Positions 39,779-63,893 of a stretch of 64,000 bases of DNA are shown here, in pieces. A model generated the notes under the pieces. That model saw only the letters and a list, made by a program, of their open reading frames with translations. It was not told the DNA's origin and did no database searches. The stretch lies in sequence record LR756511.1. One strand, written 5' to 3'. Position numbers and translations under genes: made by a program. Numbering within the stretch: position 1 is the stretch's first letter; every line of letters starts with the position of its first letter.

Positions 39779-40324
39779 ATGATGAATTTTGCACAATGGG
39801 TAGAAAACGAAATGACACTCCCTCTTCCTGACGCGAAACAGTTTTCGTACATCGCTTGCGTTCTTGACGAGATGAGTCAAACTCACTTAGAGAGCGCAAC
39901 GAAAAAGTGGTTTTTCGAATTTTTCGGCCATGACGTGCCGCCTAGCTGGAGTTGGCGATGTCACCATATGACCGTTCTATTCCGTCAAGGCGGCATTCTA
40001 ACCGAAGACTTAGAGAAGTATCGACAATACTTTGGTGATAATGTTGTACTACACATTAAAGCTATTGTGGCCGACGATAATGCGGTTGCAGCCCTTGTTC
40101 GCCCAAATATCAATTTCCCAATACAGAACCCAATTCCGCATATAACCATTGCGCACTCTAAGAGCGTATCTCCAGTTTATAGCAATTCTTTGTTATTAAA
40201 CAGAGAAAAGTTCCATAAGGTTGAAACTGTAGATGTAAACTCAGTTTTTGCGGCTGTTAAAAAGAACCAGACGGATATTTGGCCCGAAAAACCGTTTAAG
40301 CTAGCAAGTCCCGTAAAATCCTAA
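39779..40324 (+). CDS. 2H phosphoesterase (cyclic phosphodiesterase-like) with CTS-like leader
   Basis: Two HxT motifs (HHMTV, PHITIA); N-terminus MNFAQWVENE. Confidence 0.75.
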   Translation: MMNFAQWVENEMTLPLPDAKQFSYIACVLDEMSQTHLESATKKWFFEFFGHDVPPSWSWRCHHMTVLFRQGGILTEDLEKYRQYFGDNVVLHIKAIVADDNAVAALVRPNINFPIQNPIPHITIAHSKSVSPVYSNSLLLNREKFHKVETVDVNSVFAAVKKNQTDIWPEKPFKLASPVKS

Positions 40325-40335
40325 CTAGATACGGT

Positions 40336-40986
40336 ATGTTCCAGAAACTACACGAAGATGCAGATTTAACATATTTTAAGCATTTCGCTACCCAAAGAGA
40401 TAAAAGCGAGAGCGTTCCTTACGCTGAAGACTATTTCAATAAATATGTGGCTTATGAGAATTCTGAAATTTCAAAAAAGCTAAATCAGGGACGAGTGCAA
40501 ATCACAGAGAAATACTGCAAAAAAGCACTTTTGGATGTGGGTATCGGTTCTGGTGAGTTTATTAAATGTTCAAAATTAAAGGTCTATGGAACCGATATAA
40601 ATGAAGTAGCAATTGACTGGCTTAAATTTCACAAACTATATGTTGATCCATACAAAGCGGTTCCGTCTGATGTGGATGGCTGGACGTTTTGGGATAGTTT
40701 AGAGCATTTCCGCGAGCCACAGGATATTTTAACCAAAATTCCAGAAGGTAATTATGTGTTCATTTCTATGCCAATTTTCCACAATATTATGGAAGTGAAG
40801 GCAAGTAAGCATTACAGGCCAAATGAACATTACTATTACTTTACATCAATTGGTTTGATGGAATACATGAAGCAGGGTGGCTTTACGTTAGTAGAACATA
40901 ATGACCAGGAATCAAAAGCGGGTCGTGACCAAATCTTAACTTTTGTTTTCTGGAAGCATTATCCACTTAAGCGGTATATCGCCTAG
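40336..40986 (+). CDS. Class I SAM-dependent methyltransferase
   Basis: LLDVGIGSG, GTDIN, WDSLEHF, HYYYFT. Confidence 0.8.
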   Translation: MFQKLHEDADLTYFKHFATQRDKSESVPYAEDYFNKYVAYENSEISKKLNQGRVQITEKYCKKALLDVGIGSGEFIKCSKLKVYGTDINEVAIDWLKFHKLYVDPYKAVPSDVDGWTFWDSLEHFREPQDILTKIPEGNYVFISMPIFHNIMEVKASKHYRPNEHYYYFTSIGLMEYMKQGGFTLVEHNDQESKAGRDQILTFVFWKHYPLKRYIA

Positions 40987-41854: not shown

Positions 41855-42633
41855 TTATTTATTTACGATTAATAATTCGAATTGGCCCTTCTTTAATATT
41901 GCATCTACGTTAGAAACTTTCTTGTTGGTCCTATGATCCGTTACCCTATGTTCCAACAAGTTATAGGTTCTAATCTTGTTGCCACGGTTCCCATCCATCA
42001 ATTCCTTCCGCATTTGTGAATAAACTGACTTATCCTTATTCTGGATATAATCATTCACCTTTGCGGTTAGAATCTTCAAGGCTTCTCTCTTGTTACTGTG
42101 TTGGTCCCTTCCGTTTATGAAGACTTGAATTCCTGTCGGCTTATGAGTCATTCTAACGGCGGATGCTGTCTTATTCTGATGTTGCCCACCTGGACCATGC
42201 CCGCATTGAGTTACTGTATCCAATTCCCCTTCAGGAAGTGGTTTAAACTCATGTTGTGGAGGTAACGGAAGAATCGCAACCGCCACTACGGACGTTTGCT
42301 TTCTTCCCTTCGTTTCAGTTGGAGGGATACGCTGGATTATATGTTTTCCAGTTTCGTATTTAAATTTCTTCCCTGCATCCTTGCCAGAAACTTTGGCAAC
42401 AACATGACCGTTCTCCGAATCCAGAATTTCCACTTCTAGATTTGAGTTTTTGGCATATTTTGTGTATGCCGAGAATAGATCGTAGCAGAAGAGTTTCGAG
42501 TCCTCCCCGCCACACCCAAATTGGATTTCTAAGATGATTTCGTTAGCTTTGTCAAAGACGGTCTAACGGCGAAGTGGTTGCGGGATTTGCGGCTGAGTTA
42601 AAGACACACCTGATTTTTAACTTTCTTCTTCAT
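41855..42633 (-). CDS. RF1-like peptide chain release factor lacking domain 1, predicted via two +1 frameshifts (258 aa)
   Basis: SD AAAGGAGG + ATG 42633; CTT-TAA-C 42603..42597; CTT-TGA-C 42557..42551; ILEIQFGCGGEDSKLF, KYETGKHIIQRIPPTETKGR (PxT), GPGGQHQNKT (GGQ), IRTYN. Confidence 0.85.
42551..42557 (-). promoter_or_regulatory. RF2-type +1 frameshift site #2 (CUU UGA C)
   Basis: In-frame CTT TGA C after shift #1; RF1-like P-x-D-x-x-D...ILEI spans the junction; no obvious internal SD. Confidence 0.75.
42597..42611 (-). promoter_or_regulatory. RF2-type +1 frameshift cassette #1 (internal SD + CUU UAA C)
   Basis: AGGTG-TGT-CTT-TAA-C mirrors E. coli prfB AGGGGG-TAT-CTT-TGA-C spacing. Confidence 0.75.
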
Positions 42634-42664
42634 TTTTGCTTCCTCCTTTGATCTATATAAAAGC

Positions 42665-42991
42665 ATGAAGACAGTTGCGTTCTGGACCTTCCTTAGTTTG
42701 CTAATTCTGATCCATTCTATAGATATGGAACTTACCAGATATTATATTGGAAATCAATGGACAAATGAAACTTTTCCCCTAATGCGATATACCATCAAAT
42801 ATTGTGGTATTTACAACGCCATTTGGGTTAGTCGCATCTGTAGCTATATTTTCTTCTTTATTTGCTATATTTATCGGAACAATGATAAGTTGCTTTACGC
42901 TATGTTTCTCATTACTATTTTGTATTATGTAGCAATGGTAGACTGGTTATTTAGTCTAAATTTAGTTACTTGGCCGCTTCCGCCTCAATAA
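42665..42991 (+). CDS. Small integral membrane protein
   Basis: Three hydrophobic helices; D...T.Y......E..PLMR. Confidence 0.7.
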   Translation: MKTVAFWTFLSLLILIHSIDMELTRYYIGNQWTNETFPLMRYTIKYCGIYNAIWVSRICSYIFFFICYIYRNNDKLLYAMFLITILYYVAMVDWLFSLNLVTWPLPPQ

Positions 42992-55680: not shown

Positions 55681-55700
55681 TTTCTTTAATCCTCTGGAAG

Positions 55701-55783
55701 TGGTCAAGGAGGGATTCGAACCCTCACGCCCTTACGGGCACTGGCTCCTAAGGCCAGCGTGTCTGCCGTTCCACCACTTGACC
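55701..55783 (-). tRNA. tRNA-Leu(UAG)
   Basis: GGTCAAG acceptor, CTGGC-CTTAGGA-GCCAG, long variable arm, GGTTCGAATCC; no CCA. Confidence 0.93.
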
Positions 55784-62395: not shown

Positions 62396-62397
62396 AG

Positions 62398-62483
62398 TGA
62401 CCAAGGTGGGATTCGAACCCACACGGAGTAAAAACTCCACCAGGGTTTAAGCCTAGCGCGTCTACCAGTTCCGCCACATGGTC
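62398..62483 (-). tRNA. tRNA-Leu(UAA), intron-less
   Basis: CTAGG-CTTAAAC-CCTGG anticodon arm; one T-T mismatch in acceptor stem; no CCA. Confidence 0.88.
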
Positions 62484-62484
62484 A

Positions 62485-62748
62485 TTAGTAATCATCGTAA
62501 CCACCTTGAGAAGAATAATAATCTTCCCAAGCTTCTCTACGTATCTTATCTATAATCTCCTGTTCCCGTATCTCGTCTAATGACGGATAACCGTTAGCTT
62601 GTCGGTCATCTCCAGCGTTAATTAGTTTTGATAGTTGTAAACTTGGGTCTGTTGCATGGGCATCCCCGTAATAGTATTCGTATTTACATTTAGGGCAATA
62701 ATCTCTTCTTGCACTACTAACCATGTCTGGATGTTCGCAGAAACTCAT
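62485..62748 (-). CDS. Small hypothetical protein
   Basis: C.H...CPKC; stop 1 nt before tRNA. Confidence 0.6.
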   Translation of the reverse strand: MSFCEHPDMVSSARRDYCPKCKYEYYYGDAHATDPSLQLSKLINAGDDRQANGYPSLDEIREQEIIDKIRREAWEDYYSSQGGYDDY

Positions 62749-62767
62749 TTTTTAACCCTCTTAGTAG

Positions 62768-62851
62768 TGGCCGAAGTGGGAGTCGAACCCACACTCCCTT
62801 TCGGGAACCAGATTTTGAGTCTGGCGCGTCTGCCAGTTCCGCCATTCGGCC
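62768..62851 (-). tRNA. tRNA-Leu(CAA)
   Basis: CCAGA-CTCAAAA-TCTGG; GGTTCGACTCC. Confidence 0.95.
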
Positions 62852-62852
62852 T

Positions 62853-63017
62853 TTAATCTATCCACGGACCATTCTTCTCTTTAATTCTATACTTTCTACA
62901 CTTGCGTAAGGTTTTACACCTTTCCATTTCAACCACACATTCTTCAAATGTTCCTTCAAAGAATGTCCATGACCAAGCCTCTTGATCCCATTCGAATAAT
63001 TCATATAATTTCTCCAT
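62853..63017 (-). CDS. Small hypothetical protein between tRNAs
   Basis: MEKLYELFEW..., ATG 2 nt after tRNA, stop 1 nt before next tRNA. Confidence 0.55.
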   Translation of the reverse strand: MEKLYELFEWDQEAWSWTFFEGTFEECVVEMERCKTLRKCRKYRIKEKNGPWID

Positions 63018-63019
63018 AG

Positions 63020-63101
63020 TGACCGAGGTGGGATTCGAACCCACACCCCTTTCGGGACAAGCTTCTGAGGCTTGCGCGTCTACCAGTTCCGCCACTCGGC
63101 C
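63020..63101 (-). tRNA. tRNA-Leu(CAG)
   Basis: CAAGC-CTCAGAA-GCTTG; GGTTCGAATCC. Confidence 0.95.
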
Positions 63102-63103
63102 AG

Positions 63104-63271
63104 TTAGTATTTCAAATCACTTTTGTTTCCACCCTTGTTCAAGCGGTCAATAATTGCGGACGGGAATTCTTTGGTAGGTTTTCCCCACCATTTCCCCATC
63201 TTGCGATCCCATATCTGCCATCCTTTAGGTGGATTCGCTCTGACACAATATCTAGCGTTCTTCTTACCCAT
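63104..63271 (-). CDS. Small basic protein between tRNAs
   Basis: MGKKNARYC..., ATG 2 nt after tRNA, stop 2 nt before next tRNA. Confidence 0.55.
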   Translation of the reverse strand: MGKKNARYCVRANPPKGWQIWDRKMGKWWGKPTKEFPSAIIDRLNKGGNKSDLKY

Positions 63272-63273
63272 AG

Positions 63274-63355
63274 TGACTACGGTGGGAGTCGAACCCACAC
63301 CCCCGAAGGGACAAGTTTCTAAAACTTGCGCGTATACCGATTCCGCCACGCAGCC
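63274..63355 (-). tRNA. tRNA-Leu(UAG)
   Basis: CAAGT-TTTAGAA-ACTTG; GGTTCGACTCC. Confidence 0.9.
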
Positions 63356-63806: not shown

Positions 63807-63810
63807 TTAG

Positions 63811-63893
63811 TGCGTATGGTAGGAATCGAACCTACAAAGCCCGAAGGCGACAGATTTACAGTCTGTGGGACTCACCACCTGTCCAACATACGC
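63811..63893 (-). tRNA. tRNA-Tyr(GUA)
   Basis: GCGTATG/CATACGC acceptor, ACAGA-CTGTAAA-TCTGT, long variable arm; no CCA. Confidence 0.9.

What the first reader, a model, noticed from the sequence alone, without database searches (positions are those of the whole stretch)
41855..42648. Phage RF1-like release factor apparently gated by TWO tandem RF2-style +1 frameshifts (CUU-UAA-C, then CUU-UGA-C)
Seen in sequence: a strong SD (AAAGGAGG) and ATG 42633 open an 11-codon ORF ending AGGTG-TGT-CTT-TAA-C. A +1 shift gives 15 codons (NSAANPATTSPLDRL) that end in-frame at CTT-TGA-C. A second +1 shift enters DKANEIILEIQFGCGGEDSKLF..., which runs through the PxT (PPT) and GGQ motifs. The joined sequence PLDRL|DKANEIILEI matches the RF1 pattern PKDPNDxxNVILEI across the second junction. 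No in-frame ATG/GTG/TTG precedes these ~40 conserved residues, which the ORF track misses. Established: bacterial prfB uses a single internal-SD + CUU UGA C +1 shift for autoregulation; RF1 (PxT) reads UAA/UAG; domain 1 mediates RF3 interaction. Inference: this is a two-input sensor that makes the factor only when termination at both UAA (own feedback) and UGA (host RF2 status) is slow. I know of no described RF1-type gene with a frameshift, let alone two.
Basis: partly seen in the sequence, partly recalled or inferred. Interest (0 to 1): 0.92.

Follow-up and report, generated by a model that had tools for sequence, protein, structure and literature searches.

The report
Phage release factor behind two frameshifts
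A huge phage carries a shortened RF1-type translation-termination factor whose message can only be read to the end if the ribosome slips forward one base at two successive 'CUU-stop-C' sites; related phages keep this layout, so it is probably a built-in sensor of how well termination is working.

Summary
On the minus strand, SD AAAGGAGG and ATG 42633 open MKKKVKNQVCL, ending AGGTG-TGT-CTT-TAA-C. The +1 frame gives 15 codons ending CTT-TGA-C. The next +1 frame gives 232 codons of an RF1-type factor (PPT, GGQ) that lacks domain 1 and has no start codon for its first 40 conserved residues.

It is not an assembly error, a pseudogene or an alternative code. I read the 5' ends of 40 distinct related loci from independent assemblies. 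Thirteen have two tandem CTT-stop sites in exactly the +1/+1 geometry. Twenty-three have one site, two have a plain ATG, and two are unclear. Neutral sites are saturated between relatives, yet GTCTTTGACAA is invariant. Every first site has an SD-like run exactly 3 nt before CTT.

The "two-input sensor" follows mechanistically for this gene, but it is not a conserved design. Within the same clade the first stop is TAA, TAG or TGA, and pairs with the same stop twice exist. Doubling may mainly tighten or steepen the control.

The papers I searched report no frameshift in RF1 genes and no TAG in the prfB frameshift motif. The nearest precedent is the mimivirus release factor, which needs two recoding events. 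I rate this a new variant of a known kind, of high interest, and untested experimentally.

The parts
42642..42649 (-). Shine-Dalgarno AAAGGAGG for initiation of ORF0, 8 nt before the ATG
   Evidence: Sequence read. Equivalent SD+ATG+Lys-rich starts occur in relatives.
42598..42633 (-). ORF0: ATG...TAA, 11 codons, MKKKVKNQVCL*
   Evidence: Leaders in relatives are MKKKNWKSQENGQKMVSL*, MKKKDWKNQQMVCL* and MKKKNQQMVYL*.
42597..42611 (-). Frameshift site 1: SD-like AGGTG, 3-nt spacer TGT (E-site codon), slippery CTT, stop TAA, then C
   Evidence: All 10 first sites tabulated have a G-rich SD-like run ending exactly 3 nt before CTT, and 9 of 10 have C after the stop. The three further doubles read also have GGTG at that spacing.
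42552..42599 (-). Middle (+1) frame segment: 15 codons NSAANPATTSPLDRL, then TGA; it has no ATG/GTG/TTG of its own
   Evidence: The same length and similar peptides occur in relatives (SSATTPAQSPLLDCL, SSSNNPAQTPLLDCL), with synonymous-type changes. In L242 the homologous SSSN... segment is directly in frame with an SD-led ATG.
42551..42560 (-). Frameshift site 2: CGT (E-site codon), CTT, TGA, C; there is no SD-like run upstream (TTAGAC)
   Evidence: GTCTTTGACAA is invariant in the six-sequence DNA alignment A1, although synonymous sites are saturated. Thirty of 32 sites that enter the release-factor frame are CTT-stop and 2 are GTT-TGA.
41855..42553 (-). Main frame: 232 codons plus TAA, an RF1-type class-I release factor with domains 2-4 only
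   Evidence: Pfam PCRF (model positions 99-194 of 194) plus RF-1. NCBIfam prfA scores 223 bits from model position 103, against 152 for prfB. PDB RF1 chains score 153 bits against 93 for RF2. The AlphaFold2 model has pLDDT 88 and TM 0.85-0.89 to ribosome-bound RF1.
42500..42541 (-). EIILEIQFGCGGED: start of the conserved domain, aligning to RF1's RAGTGGDEA segment. It lies upstream of the first possible in-frame start.
   Evidence: G13, G15, G16, D18, S19 and K20 are invariant in the family alignment. For codons 1-40, pN is 0.09-0.26 against pS 0.72-1.0 in the five closest comparisons.
42290..42334 (-). Stop-codon reading loop QRIPPTETKGRKQTS, with the PxT tripeptide as PPT (42317-42325)
   Evidence: It aligns with QRVPxTExxGRxHTS of full-length RF1.
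42182..42190 (-). GGQ peptidyl-tRNA hydrolysis motif (GPGGQHQNK)
   Evidence: G122, G123 and Q124 invariant.
42431..42433 (-). GTG, the first in-frame start codon of the main frame (codon 41); it is what an ORF finder reports (192 aa)
   Evidence: The database entry P0001 is this 192-aa truncation.

Best explanation
The gene encodes a phage version of bacterial release factor 1. It keeps the stop-codon-reading and peptide-release domains (2-4) but lacks domain 1. The full protein would be 258 residues (11 + 15 + 232).

Proposed route of translation:
1. Ribosomes start at ATG 42633.
2. After 11 codons, CUU sits in the P site and UAA-C in the A site, with an SD-like AGGUG 3 nt behind. Either a release factor terminates, giving an 11-residue peptide, or peptidyl-tRNA-Leu re-pairs from CUU to UUU (+1) and reading continues at AAC.
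3. Fifteen codons later the same choice recurs at CUU-UGA-C. Termination gives a 26-residue peptide. A +1 slip enters the release-factor frame at GAC.

The yield is the product of two probabilities, each of which falls as termination at that stop gets faster. The factor is therefore made only when termination is slow. UAA is read by RF1-type factors, by inference including the product itself, and by RF2. UGA is read only by host RF2.

Shown here: the anatomy, its conservation, selection on the first 40 codons, and the RF1 identity of the product.

Inferred: that slippage actually happens, which factors govern each site, and that the product is an active UAA/UAG terminator that works without RF3.

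One possible rationale (inference): an RF1-type factor takes over UAA (53% of this phage's stops) and so frees scarce RF2 for UGA. Doubling the site may mainly lower the basal level and steepen the response.
For: **Anatomy.**

**Identity of the product.**

**Not an alternative code.** ORFs of at least 100 aa cover 85% of the window under code 11, and all three stops are in use. Genome-wide, treating TAG as sense gains no more than the TGA control; stops are TAA 260, TGA 138, TAG 89.

**Not an assembly error.**
- The genome is the manually curated complete SR-VP_PHAGE_COMPLETE_CIR-CU-CL_42_23.
- Both sites recur in independent assemblies at 72-86% protein identity: L035, L002/L003, L037, L240/L241, L243 and L238/L239.
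- Tandem sites also occur in more distant lineages: L039, L038, L040, L043, L115 and L120.

**Frame census.** Upstream CTT-stop motifs fall only in the two required frames (32 and 11, none in the third). All CTT-to-CTT spacings are 1 mod 3: 46, 40, 43, 67, 52, 49 and 37 nt.

**Selection.**
- pN is 0.09-0.38 while pS is about 0.7-1.0 (saturated). This includes the 40 codons that have no start of their own.
- An 11-nt block, GTCTTTGACAA, is invariant.
- An SD-like run sits 3 nt before CTT at every first site, and at 14 of the 23 single sites by my reading of the and 98 tables.

**Context.**
- L242 has the middle-frame peptide directly in frame with an ATG, so that segment is translated sequence.
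- Gene order around the locus is conserved, with neighbours at 50-70% identity.
- The genome holds tRNA-Leu(GAG) and two tRNA-Leu(UAG), which can read CUU.
- It has only this one release-factor homologue.
- Domain 1 is dispensable for release in vitro, and truncated RF1 works in vivo, as cited in PMC1586002.
Against: - There is no experimental evidence of slippage or of the 258-residue product.
- Site 2 in this clade has no SD-like stimulator (TTAGAC-CGT). No RNA structure is evident either; the leader folds less well than shuffled sequences (z = +1.66). The combined yield could therefore be very low.
- Gating is dispensable in evolution. L242 (79% identity) has one site, and L007 and L044 have a plain ATG.
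- The stop at site 1 is TAA, TAG or TGA within one clade. Most single-site relatives pair an RF1-type PxT loop with UGA. 'Autoregulation at one site, host RF2 at the other' is therefore not a conserved rule.
- The host is unknown.
- The same genome carries an amber-suppressor tRNA(CUA). Its interplay with an RF1-type factor is unexplained.
Confidence: 0.8

Rival explanations
1. Only site 2 is a programmed frameshift. ORF0 is a separate upstream mini-ORF, and ribosomes enter the middle frame by some other route: a non-canonical start, or re-initiation after terminating at TAA.
For: - Site 2 is the widespread, probably ancestral, element: 23 single-site relatives.
- L002 has an ATG in the middle frame (MARKWCLF...).
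- L242 shows that a single-site version works in the same clade.
Against: - In the window, in L037 and in L240, the middle frame has no ATG/GTG/TTG between its upstream stop and site 2.
- In every double the strong SD and ATG are in the outer frame.
- Every first site carries the full prfB signature: an SD-like run, a 3-nt spacer, CTT, a stop and mostly C.
- The first site always lies in the one frame that feeds the middle frame. Ten of 10 first sites within 100 nt in the census do so, and the three further doubles do too.
Confidence: 0.1
2. Translational bypassing (hopping), as in T4 gene 60. Peptidyl-tRNA-Leu takes off from CUU before the UAA, and the ribosome slides about 46 nt. It lands on the second CUU/UUU, so the 15 codons in between are never translated.
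For: - The take-off and landing codons match (CTT...CTT), and a stop follows the take-off codon directly.
- The gap of 37-52 nt in most relatives is close to the 50-nt gap of gene 60 (recalled from memory).
Against: - The codon after a CUU landing is itself a stop (UGA), so a shift would still be needed.
- All 13 tandem pairs have a spacing of 1 mod 3 and a stop-free middle frame, which bypassing does not require.
- The middle-frame peptide is partly conserved, with synonymous-type changes. In L242 it is in frame with an ATG.
- No take-off hairpin is predicted.
Confidence: 0.04
3. There is no frameshift. The main frame is read from an upstream start (GTG 42607-42605), and its in-frame TAG (42565-42563) is decoded by the phage's own amber-suppressor tRNA or under a TAG-recoded code.
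For: - The genome encodes a well-formed tRNA with anticodon CUA (Rfam 65 bits).
- The TAG three codons before GAC is kept in the close clade.
Against: - The genome uses TAG as a stop (89 of 487 long ORFs), and treating TAG as sense gains no more than the TGA control.
- The GTG has no usable SD, and it is GTC in L002.
- L005 and many single-site relatives have no start at all in the main frame.
- The conserved TAG is explained as (T/C)TA-GAC = Leu-Asp in the middle frame, with a synonymous TTA/CTA change.
- The strong SD+ATG lies in another frame in every relative.
Confidence: 0.03
4. Sequencing or assembly indels in TTT runs, or a decaying pseudogene.
For: Both sites contain a T triplet, where an extra T would mimic a frameshift.
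Against: - The same two interruptions occur in at least seven independent assemblies of the close clade and in other lineages.
- The genome was manually curated to completion.
- There is strong purifying selection, with pN far below pS.
- The flanking SD-like run, spacer and +4 C co-occur with the sites.
Confidence: 0.02

Closest known systems
Programmed +1 frameshift of bacterial prfB (RF2 autoregulation)
   Same: - The gene encodes a class-I release factor.
- A short ORF0 ends in CUU-stop-C.
- An SD-like run lies 3 nt before CUU (site 1).
- The +1 frame carries the conserved protein.
- Slippage competes with termination, so the site senses release-factor activity.
   Different: - The product is RF1-type (PxT) and lacks domain 1.
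- It is phage-encoded.
- Two sites act in series.
- The stops used across the family include UAG and UAA. PMC12421855 found TGA in 98.6% of 8,164 prfB motifs and never TAG.
- At UGA sites the factor being sensed (RF2) is not the factor being made.
- Site 2 here lacks the SD.
Mimivirus/Megavirus class-I release factor gene (Jeudy et al. 2012, PMC3521657)
   Same: It is a virus-encoded termination factor whose translation must pass two internal stops by two recoding events. The authors interpret this as bacterial-style autoregulation.
   Different: - That factor is eRF1-type, in a virus of amoebae.
- The two events differ in kind (one readthrough, one frameshift).
- Here both events are prfB-like +1 shifts, about 46 nt apart, at the very start of a bacterial-type RF1.
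Phage-encoded RF1/RF2 in stop-codon-recoded phages (Borges et al. preprint 10.1101/2021.08.26.457843; PMC10746230)
   Same: Phages carry their own class-I release factors together with suppressor tRNAs. This genome also has a tRNA(CUA).
   Different: - Those factors are discussed as tools for switching the genetic code.
- The word 'frameshift' does not occur in any of the three papers searched.
- This genome uses the standard code.
PrfH (RF-H), the domain-1-less release-factor homologue paired with RtcB2
   Same: It lacks domain 1 and keeps GGQ (PMC1586002).
   Different: - PrfH has a divergent decoding region and rescues damaged ribosomes.
- The window protein scores 77 bits against a cut-off of 166.65 for the prfH model.
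- It keeps the RF1 PxT loop.
- The ten neighbouring ORFs scanned gave no RtcB hit.
Antizyme +1 frameshifting
   Same: It is a sensor-effector circuit in which slippage at a codon-stop junction sets the level of a regulator.
   Different: It is eukaryotic, polyamine-sensing and single-site, with different stimulators. This entry is from memory and PMC5009743 only.

Membership tests
Bacterial RF1 (prfA; Pfam PCRF + RF-1; NCBIfam TIGR00019 / NF001859) | GGQ peptidyl-tRNA hydrolysis motif | tested here: met
   GPGGQHQNK, residues 122-124 of the main frame; invariant in the family alignment.
Bacterial RF1 (prfA; Pfam PCRF + RF-1; NCBIfam TIGR00019 / NF001859) | RF1-type decoding loop: the PxT tripeptide with its flanking Gln and Thr (QRxPxT...HTS) | tested here: met
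   QRIPPTETKGRKQTS aligns with QRVPxTExxGRIHTS of full-length RF1. HMM scores favour RF1 over RF2: 223 against 152 bits, and 153 against 93 bits for PDB chains.
Bacterial RF1 (prfA; Pfam PCRF + RF-1; NCBIfam TIGR00019 / NF001859) | Fold of domains 2, 3 and 4 | tested here: met
   The AlphaFold2 model has pLDDT 88 and pTM 0.74. Foldseek gives TM 0.85-0.89 and rmsd 2.6-2.9 Å to ribosome-bound RF1.
Bacterial RF1 (prfA; Pfam PCRF + RF-1; NCBIfam TIGR00019 / NF001859) | N-terminal domain 1 (about 100 residues; the RF3 contact region, PMC1586002) | tested here: not met
   HMM matches begin at model position 103 of 347 (NF001859), 111 of 361 (TIGR00019) and PCRF 99 of 194. The leader adds only 26 residues. 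No domain-1-like gene is found next door.
Bacterial RF1 (prfA; Pfam PCRF + RF-1; NCBIfam TIGR00019 / NF001859) | Score above the curated equivalog cut-off | tested here: not met
   223 bits against a cut-off of 400, and 218 against 423. I therefore call it an RF1-derived short paralogue, not a prfA equivalog. The short forms make one clade (100/100 support) apart from full-length RF1.
Bacterial RF1 (prfA; Pfam PCRF + RF-1; NCBIfam TIGR00019 / NF001859) | Codon-dependent peptide release at UAA and UAG | not testable with these tools
   This needs an in vitro release assay.
prfB-type programmed +1 frameshift cassette | CUU in the P site directly followed by a stop codon, with the conserved protein in the +1 frame | tested here: met
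   Both sites: CTT-TAA and CTT-TGA.
prfB-type programmed +1 frameshift cassette | Weak termination context: C after the stop | tested here: met
   C at 42597 and at 42551. C follows the stop in 23 of 32 sites that enter the release-factor frame and in 9 of 10 first sites.
prfB-type programmed +1 frameshift cassette | Internal Shine-Dalgarno-like run 3 nt upstream of CUU | tested here: inconclusive
   Site 1 has it (AGGTG plus TGT), and so do all 10 first sites. Site 2 does not (TTAGAC plus CGT), in the window or in any member of its clade.
prfB-type programmed +1 frameshift cassette | Short ORF0 with its own start signals, and no start codon in the downstream frame | tested here: met
   SD AAAGGAGG and ATG 42633. 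The middle frame has no start codon, and the main frame has none before codon 41.
prfB-type programmed +1 frameshift cassette | Site and frame geometry conserved among homologues | tested here: met
   36 of 40 distinct loci carry at least one site, and 13 carry two.
prfB-type programmed +1 frameshift cassette | The stop in the site is one read by the encoded factor (true autoregulation) | tested here: inconclusive
   By the PxT rule the product should read UAA (site 1) but not UGA (site 2). No general covariation between the tripeptide and the stop codon was found. The only hint is L038: SPT with TGA,TGA.
prfB-type programmed +1 frameshift cassette | Demonstrated +1 slippage that responds to release-factor level | not testable with these tools
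   This needs reporter assays or mass spectrometry.
PrfH (RF-H) | Score above the prfH model cut-off, and pairing with RtcB | tested here: not met
   77 bits against a cut-off of 166.65. The neighbours scanned gave no RtcB hit.
T4 gene 60-type translational bypass | Matched take-off and landing codons, a stop after take-off, and decoding that resumes directly after landing | tested here: not met
   The codons match (CTT/CTT), but the codon after landing is TGA. Spacing is always 1 mod 3 with an open middle frame. No hairpin is predicted.

The most novel reading that the evidence does not exclude
Huge phages carry a family of short, probably RF3-independent RF1-type terminators. Their synthesis would be switched on by a translational logic gate built from one or two prfB-like +1 frameshift sites. 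The stop codon at each site (UAG, UAA or UGA) chooses which termination pathway is monitored. The window gene would then be an AND gate over RF1/RF2-dependent (UAA) and RF2-dependent (UGA) termination. This would be the first frameshift-controlled RF1-type gene, the first natural use of CUU-UAG-C, and the first tandem +1 frameshift sensor.
Probability: 0.55. Interest if true: 0.9.

Novelty: new variant of a known kind. Interest (0 to 1): 0.85.

Why it matters
RF2 autoregulation by +1 frameshifting is a textbook case of recoding. Its restriction to prfB, and to UGA, has been taken as evidence that only RF2 needs such control (PMC12421855).

These phage genes suggest that the same device has been fitted to an RF1-type factor, with UAG, UAA or UGA, and repeatedly duplicated in tandem. 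Three consequences follow.

- They offer natural material for testing how stop identity, the SD-like run, the E-site codon and site number set the gain of a translational sensor.
- They suggest that huge phages monitor and adjust termination capacity in the infected cell.
- Gene callers truncate or mis-start these genes (192-224 aa entries, invented TTG starts). Surveys of phage translation genes may therefore have missed the leaders.

Tried and rejected
- **Alternative genetic code.** Rejected. Code 11 gives 85% coverage, and treating TAG as sense gains no more than the controls, both in the window and genome-wide.
- **TAG readthrough in the main frame.** Rejected; see the rival explanations.
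- **Covariation between the decoding tripeptide and the stop used at the site.** Not found. PPT occurs with TGA, TAG and TAA. The only hints are L038 (SPT with TGA,TGA) and a PKN/PKS-loop clade with TGA.
- **RNA structure as a stimulator for the SD-less second site.** None found. The leader folds less well than shuffled sequences.
- **Promoter and terminator scan around the gene.** Nothing above chance.
- **DNA-pattern scan of IMG/VR with the site-1 motif.** Of 27 hits, only the two already known contigs carry a release-factor gene.
- **Domain 1 supplied by a neighbouring gene.** No Pfam or PHROG hit was found for the four nearest ORFs, and no domain-1-like Pfam hit in any of the ten scanned.
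- **Host assignment.** The source paper gives no host call (82% of genes unknown; Proteobacteria, Parcubacteria and Planctomycetes 2-4% each). The Planctomycetota bias among full-length relatives is partly an artefact of the peptide pattern PGGQHQNK used for retrieval.
- **GenBank phage collection.** It holds no close relative other than the source record.
Full report
**What is in the sequence**

The window is part of LR756511.1, a 595,163-bp uncultured phage genome. The source paper lists it as SR-VP_PHAGE_COMPLETE_CIR-CU-CL_42_23, from vernal-pool mud, manually curated to completion, with no host call.

The gene lies on the minus strand.
- AAAGGAGG (42649-42642) and ATG 42633 open MKKKVKNQVCL*. 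This ends AGGTG-TGT-CTT-TAA-C (42611-42597).
- The +1 frame reads NSAANPATTSPLDRL* and ends CGT-CTT-TGA-C (42560-42551).
- The next +1 frame runs 232 codons to TAA at 41855.

The last frame is closed by TAG three codons upstream, and its first ATG/GTG/TTG is GTG 42433, codon 41. The middle frame has no start codon at all.

**What the product is**

The 232-residue part matches Pfam PCRF (only model positions 99-194) and RF-1. It scores 223 bits on NCBIfam prfA from model position 103, against 152 on prfB and 77 on prfH. Against solved structures it gives 153 bits for RF1 chains and 93 for RF2.

It carries GGQ and the RF1-type loop QRIPPTETKGRKQTS. An AlphaFold2 model (pLDDT 88) superposes on ribosome-bound RF1 with TM 0.85-0.89.

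It is therefore an RF1-derived factor without domain 1. It falls below the equivalog cut-offs, and the short forms make a clade of their own (100/100 support) apart from full-length RF1. Baranov et al. cite earlier work showing that domain 1 is not needed for release in vitro and that truncated RF1 works in vivo (PMC1586002). The full product would be 11 + 15 + 232 = 258 residues.

**Not a different code, an error or a pseudogene**

- Under code 11, ORFs of at least 100 aa cover 85% of the window, and all three stops are used. The same holds for the whole genome: TAA 260, TGA 138, TAG 89. Treating TAG as sense gains no more than the TGA control. Readthrough alone cannot join the pieces in any case, because the frame changes twice.
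- Between the window and its relatives, synonymous sites are saturated (pS 0.72-1.0) while pN is 0.09-0.38. This holds for the first 40 codons, which have no start of their own. That stretch is therefore translated.
- Gene order around the locus is conserved, with neighbours at 50-70% identity.

**Relatives**

I searched viral, metagenome and genome collections and looked up called proteins, then read the 5' regions of 40 distinct short-RF loci.

Thirteen have two tandem sites.

| Locus | Identity | Stops (site 1, site 2) |
|---|---|---|
| Window | - | TAA, TGA |
| L035, L002/L003, L037, L240/L241, L243 | 72-86% | TAG, TGA |
| L238/L239 | 73% | TGA, TGA |
| L039 | 58% | TAG, TGA |
| L038 | 56% | TGA, TGA |
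| L040, L043, L115, L120 | 53-55% | TAG, TAG |

Twenty-three have one site: 16 CTT-TGA, 5 CTT-TAG and 2 GTT-TGA. L007 and L044 start with an ordinary ATG just before the domain. L053 and L054 are unclear, with an in-frame TGA after a short leader.

An unbiased census found CTT-stop motifs upstream only in the two frames the model needs (32 and 11, none in the third). Their density is about 12 times that inside the genes. All tandem spacings are 1 mod 3.

GTCTTTGACAA is invariant across six sequences despite saturated neutral sites. All 10 first sites tabulated have a G-rich SD-like run ending exactly 3 nt before CTT (GGTG, GGAGG or GGGGG), and the three further doubles have GGTG at the same spacing. 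The E-site codon is usually TGT, and C usually follows the stop.

L242 (79% identity) has a single site. Its ATG is directly in frame with the SSSN... peptide that in the doubles lies between the sites. That segment is therefore real coding sequence.

The tree places doubles in at least four or five lineages, next to singles. The second site has been gained or lost repeatedly.

Database proteins for this family are typically truncated (192-224 aa), or start at invented TTG codons that read the site as ...VFD....

**How it most likely works**

By analogy with prfB (established mechanism): with CUU in the P site and a poorly read stop in the A site, peptidyl-tRNA-Leu can re-pair on UUU, in competition with termination.
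- At site 1 the competitors are any factors that read UAA. These are host RF1 and RF2 and, by inference, the phage factor itself.
- At site 2 only RF2 reads UGA.
- Output is the product of the two slippage probabilities. The factor is made only when both kinds of termination are slow.

It remains an inference.

The relatives qualify it. Within one clade site 1 can be TAA, TAG or TGA. Pairs with the same stop twice are common. Most single-site members combine a PxT loop with UGA. The general function of doubling may therefore be a tighter off-state and a steeper response, rather than two distinct inputs.

A UGA sensor driving an RF1-type factor may still make sense, because extra RF1-type activity takes over UAA (53% of this phage's stops) and frees RF2 for UGA. 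That idea is speculative.

A weak point is that site 2 in this clade has no SD-like run and no predicted RNA structure.

**Rivals**

- A separate upstream mini-ORF plus a single shift is possible, but it fits poorly with the start-less middle frame and the complete prfB signature at site 1.
- A gene-60-like hop from CUU to CUU is disfavoured by the stop after the landing codon and by the strict frame rule.
- Reading the main frame through its TAG with the phage's own tRNA(CUA) lacks a usable start and is contradicted by the single-site relatives.
- Assembly error is excluded by recurrence in independent assemblies.

**Comparison with what is known**

- A 2025 survey of more than 12,000 bacterial genomes found no programmed frameshift in prfA, and never TAG in the prfB motif (PMC12421855).
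- The 2016 recoding review calls the RF1 counterpart unknown. It does note a giant-virus release factor that needs a readthrough and a frameshift (PMC5009743; PMC3521657).
- Papers on phage release factors discuss code switching. The word 'frameshift' does not occur in any of the three searched.
- My searches found no description of this family or its leaders.

I therefore rate it a new variant of a known kind: the prfB device on a phage RF1-type gene, with other stop codons, and in tandem.

**Verdict**

The structural interpretation is supported. The regulatory logic is plausible but untested and not universal in the family. Interest is high.

Noticed in passing
L198 29588-29661 (-), = LR756511.1 179588-179661 (outside the window): The same phage genome encodes a well-formed tRNA with anticodon CUA, an amber suppressor (Rfam tRNA 65 bits). 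Yet TAG ends about 18% of its long ORFs and the genome reads as standard code. The window gene has TAA at site 1, where five of the six other tandem-site members of its clade have TAG and one has TGA. This may or may not be connected.
   Followed up: partly
L200 40614-40689 (-), = LR756511.1 290614-290689: ARAGORN calls a tRNA-like gene with an 8-nt anticodon loop and a four-base anticodon 'gaaa' (loop UGGAAACA). That shape resembles +1 frameshift-suppressor tRNAs. It would read UUUC, not the CUUU of the release-factor sites.
   Followed up: no
L201 41280-41632 (-), = LR756511.1 341280-341632: A phage-encoded tmRNA with tag peptide ANPEFAMAA. The genome has 62 tRNA genes and only this one release-factor homologue.
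   Followed up: no
window 55700-55783, 62397-63355 and 63810-63893 (-): A cluster of five tRNA-Leu genes (anticodons UAG twice, UAA, CAA, CAG) plus tRNA-Tyr. tRNA-Leu(UAG) would read the CUU slippery codon with a weak third-position pair, which could favour slippage.
   Followed up: no
window 39779-40324 (+) and 40336-40986 (+): Two conserved neighbours downstream of the release-factor operon: a protein with a tRNA-ligase cyclic-phosphodiesterase-like domain (PF08302) and a class-I methyltransferase (PF13489). Both are also present next to the gene in L002/L003.
   Followed up: partly
window 42665-42991 (+): A divergently transcribed 108-aa ORF with a hydrophobic N-terminus starts about 30 nt from the release-factor start. 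It is conserved (59-65% identity) in L002-L006 and L037. The release-factor promoter must therefore lie inside it. No family match was found.
   Followed up: partly
L208 (LR756501.1), L209 (LR745206.1), L210 (LR756502.1), each about 1185-1900: Other huge phages (634-735 kb) also carry short RF1-type genes (PPT loop), but with an ordinary ATG right before the domain. They have one or two in-frame TGA codons, one of them at the same aligned position in all three. This would fit TGA-recoded genomes. L207 (LR756504.1) has an in-frame TAA instead.
   Followed up: partly
L053 about 180-290; L054 about 1300-1400 (= L062): Two relatives have no frameshift. Instead a short leader sits in the same frame as the factor, interrupted by TGA (MRTQYSKKGSS*RET..., MGK*TEGAS...). 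This is either readthrough-type gating or a downstream non-ATG start.
   Followed up: no
L045 about 1496 and L047 about 290: A sister pair uses GTT-TGA-G instead of CTT-TGA, still with an SD-like run 3 nt upstream. The slippery P-site codon is therefore not restricted to Leu CUU.
   Followed up: no
L038 (decoding loop) and L048, L008/L049, L051, L056: L038 has SPT instead of PxT and uses TGA at both sites. This could be a factor that also reads UGA. A separate clade has a one-residue-shorter loop (QRCPKN-GGGR) in place of PxTE.
   Followed up: partly
L004 and L005/L006, 3' end of the release-factor gene (proteins P0012, P0015): The single-site sister group of the window clade has a C-terminal extension of about 55 residues with a Cys-rich motif (..CDWCLEYVL..) that is absent from the window protein.
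   Followed up: no
L115-L122 (contigs binned as Pirellulaceae/Planctomycetota MAGs): Short frameshift-gated release-factor genes occur on contigs assigned to planctomycete MAGs. The nearest full-length RF1s retrieved are also planctomycete. This may be a host hint or mis-binned phage contigs, and retrieval was biased by the motif PGGQHQNK.
   Followed up: partly
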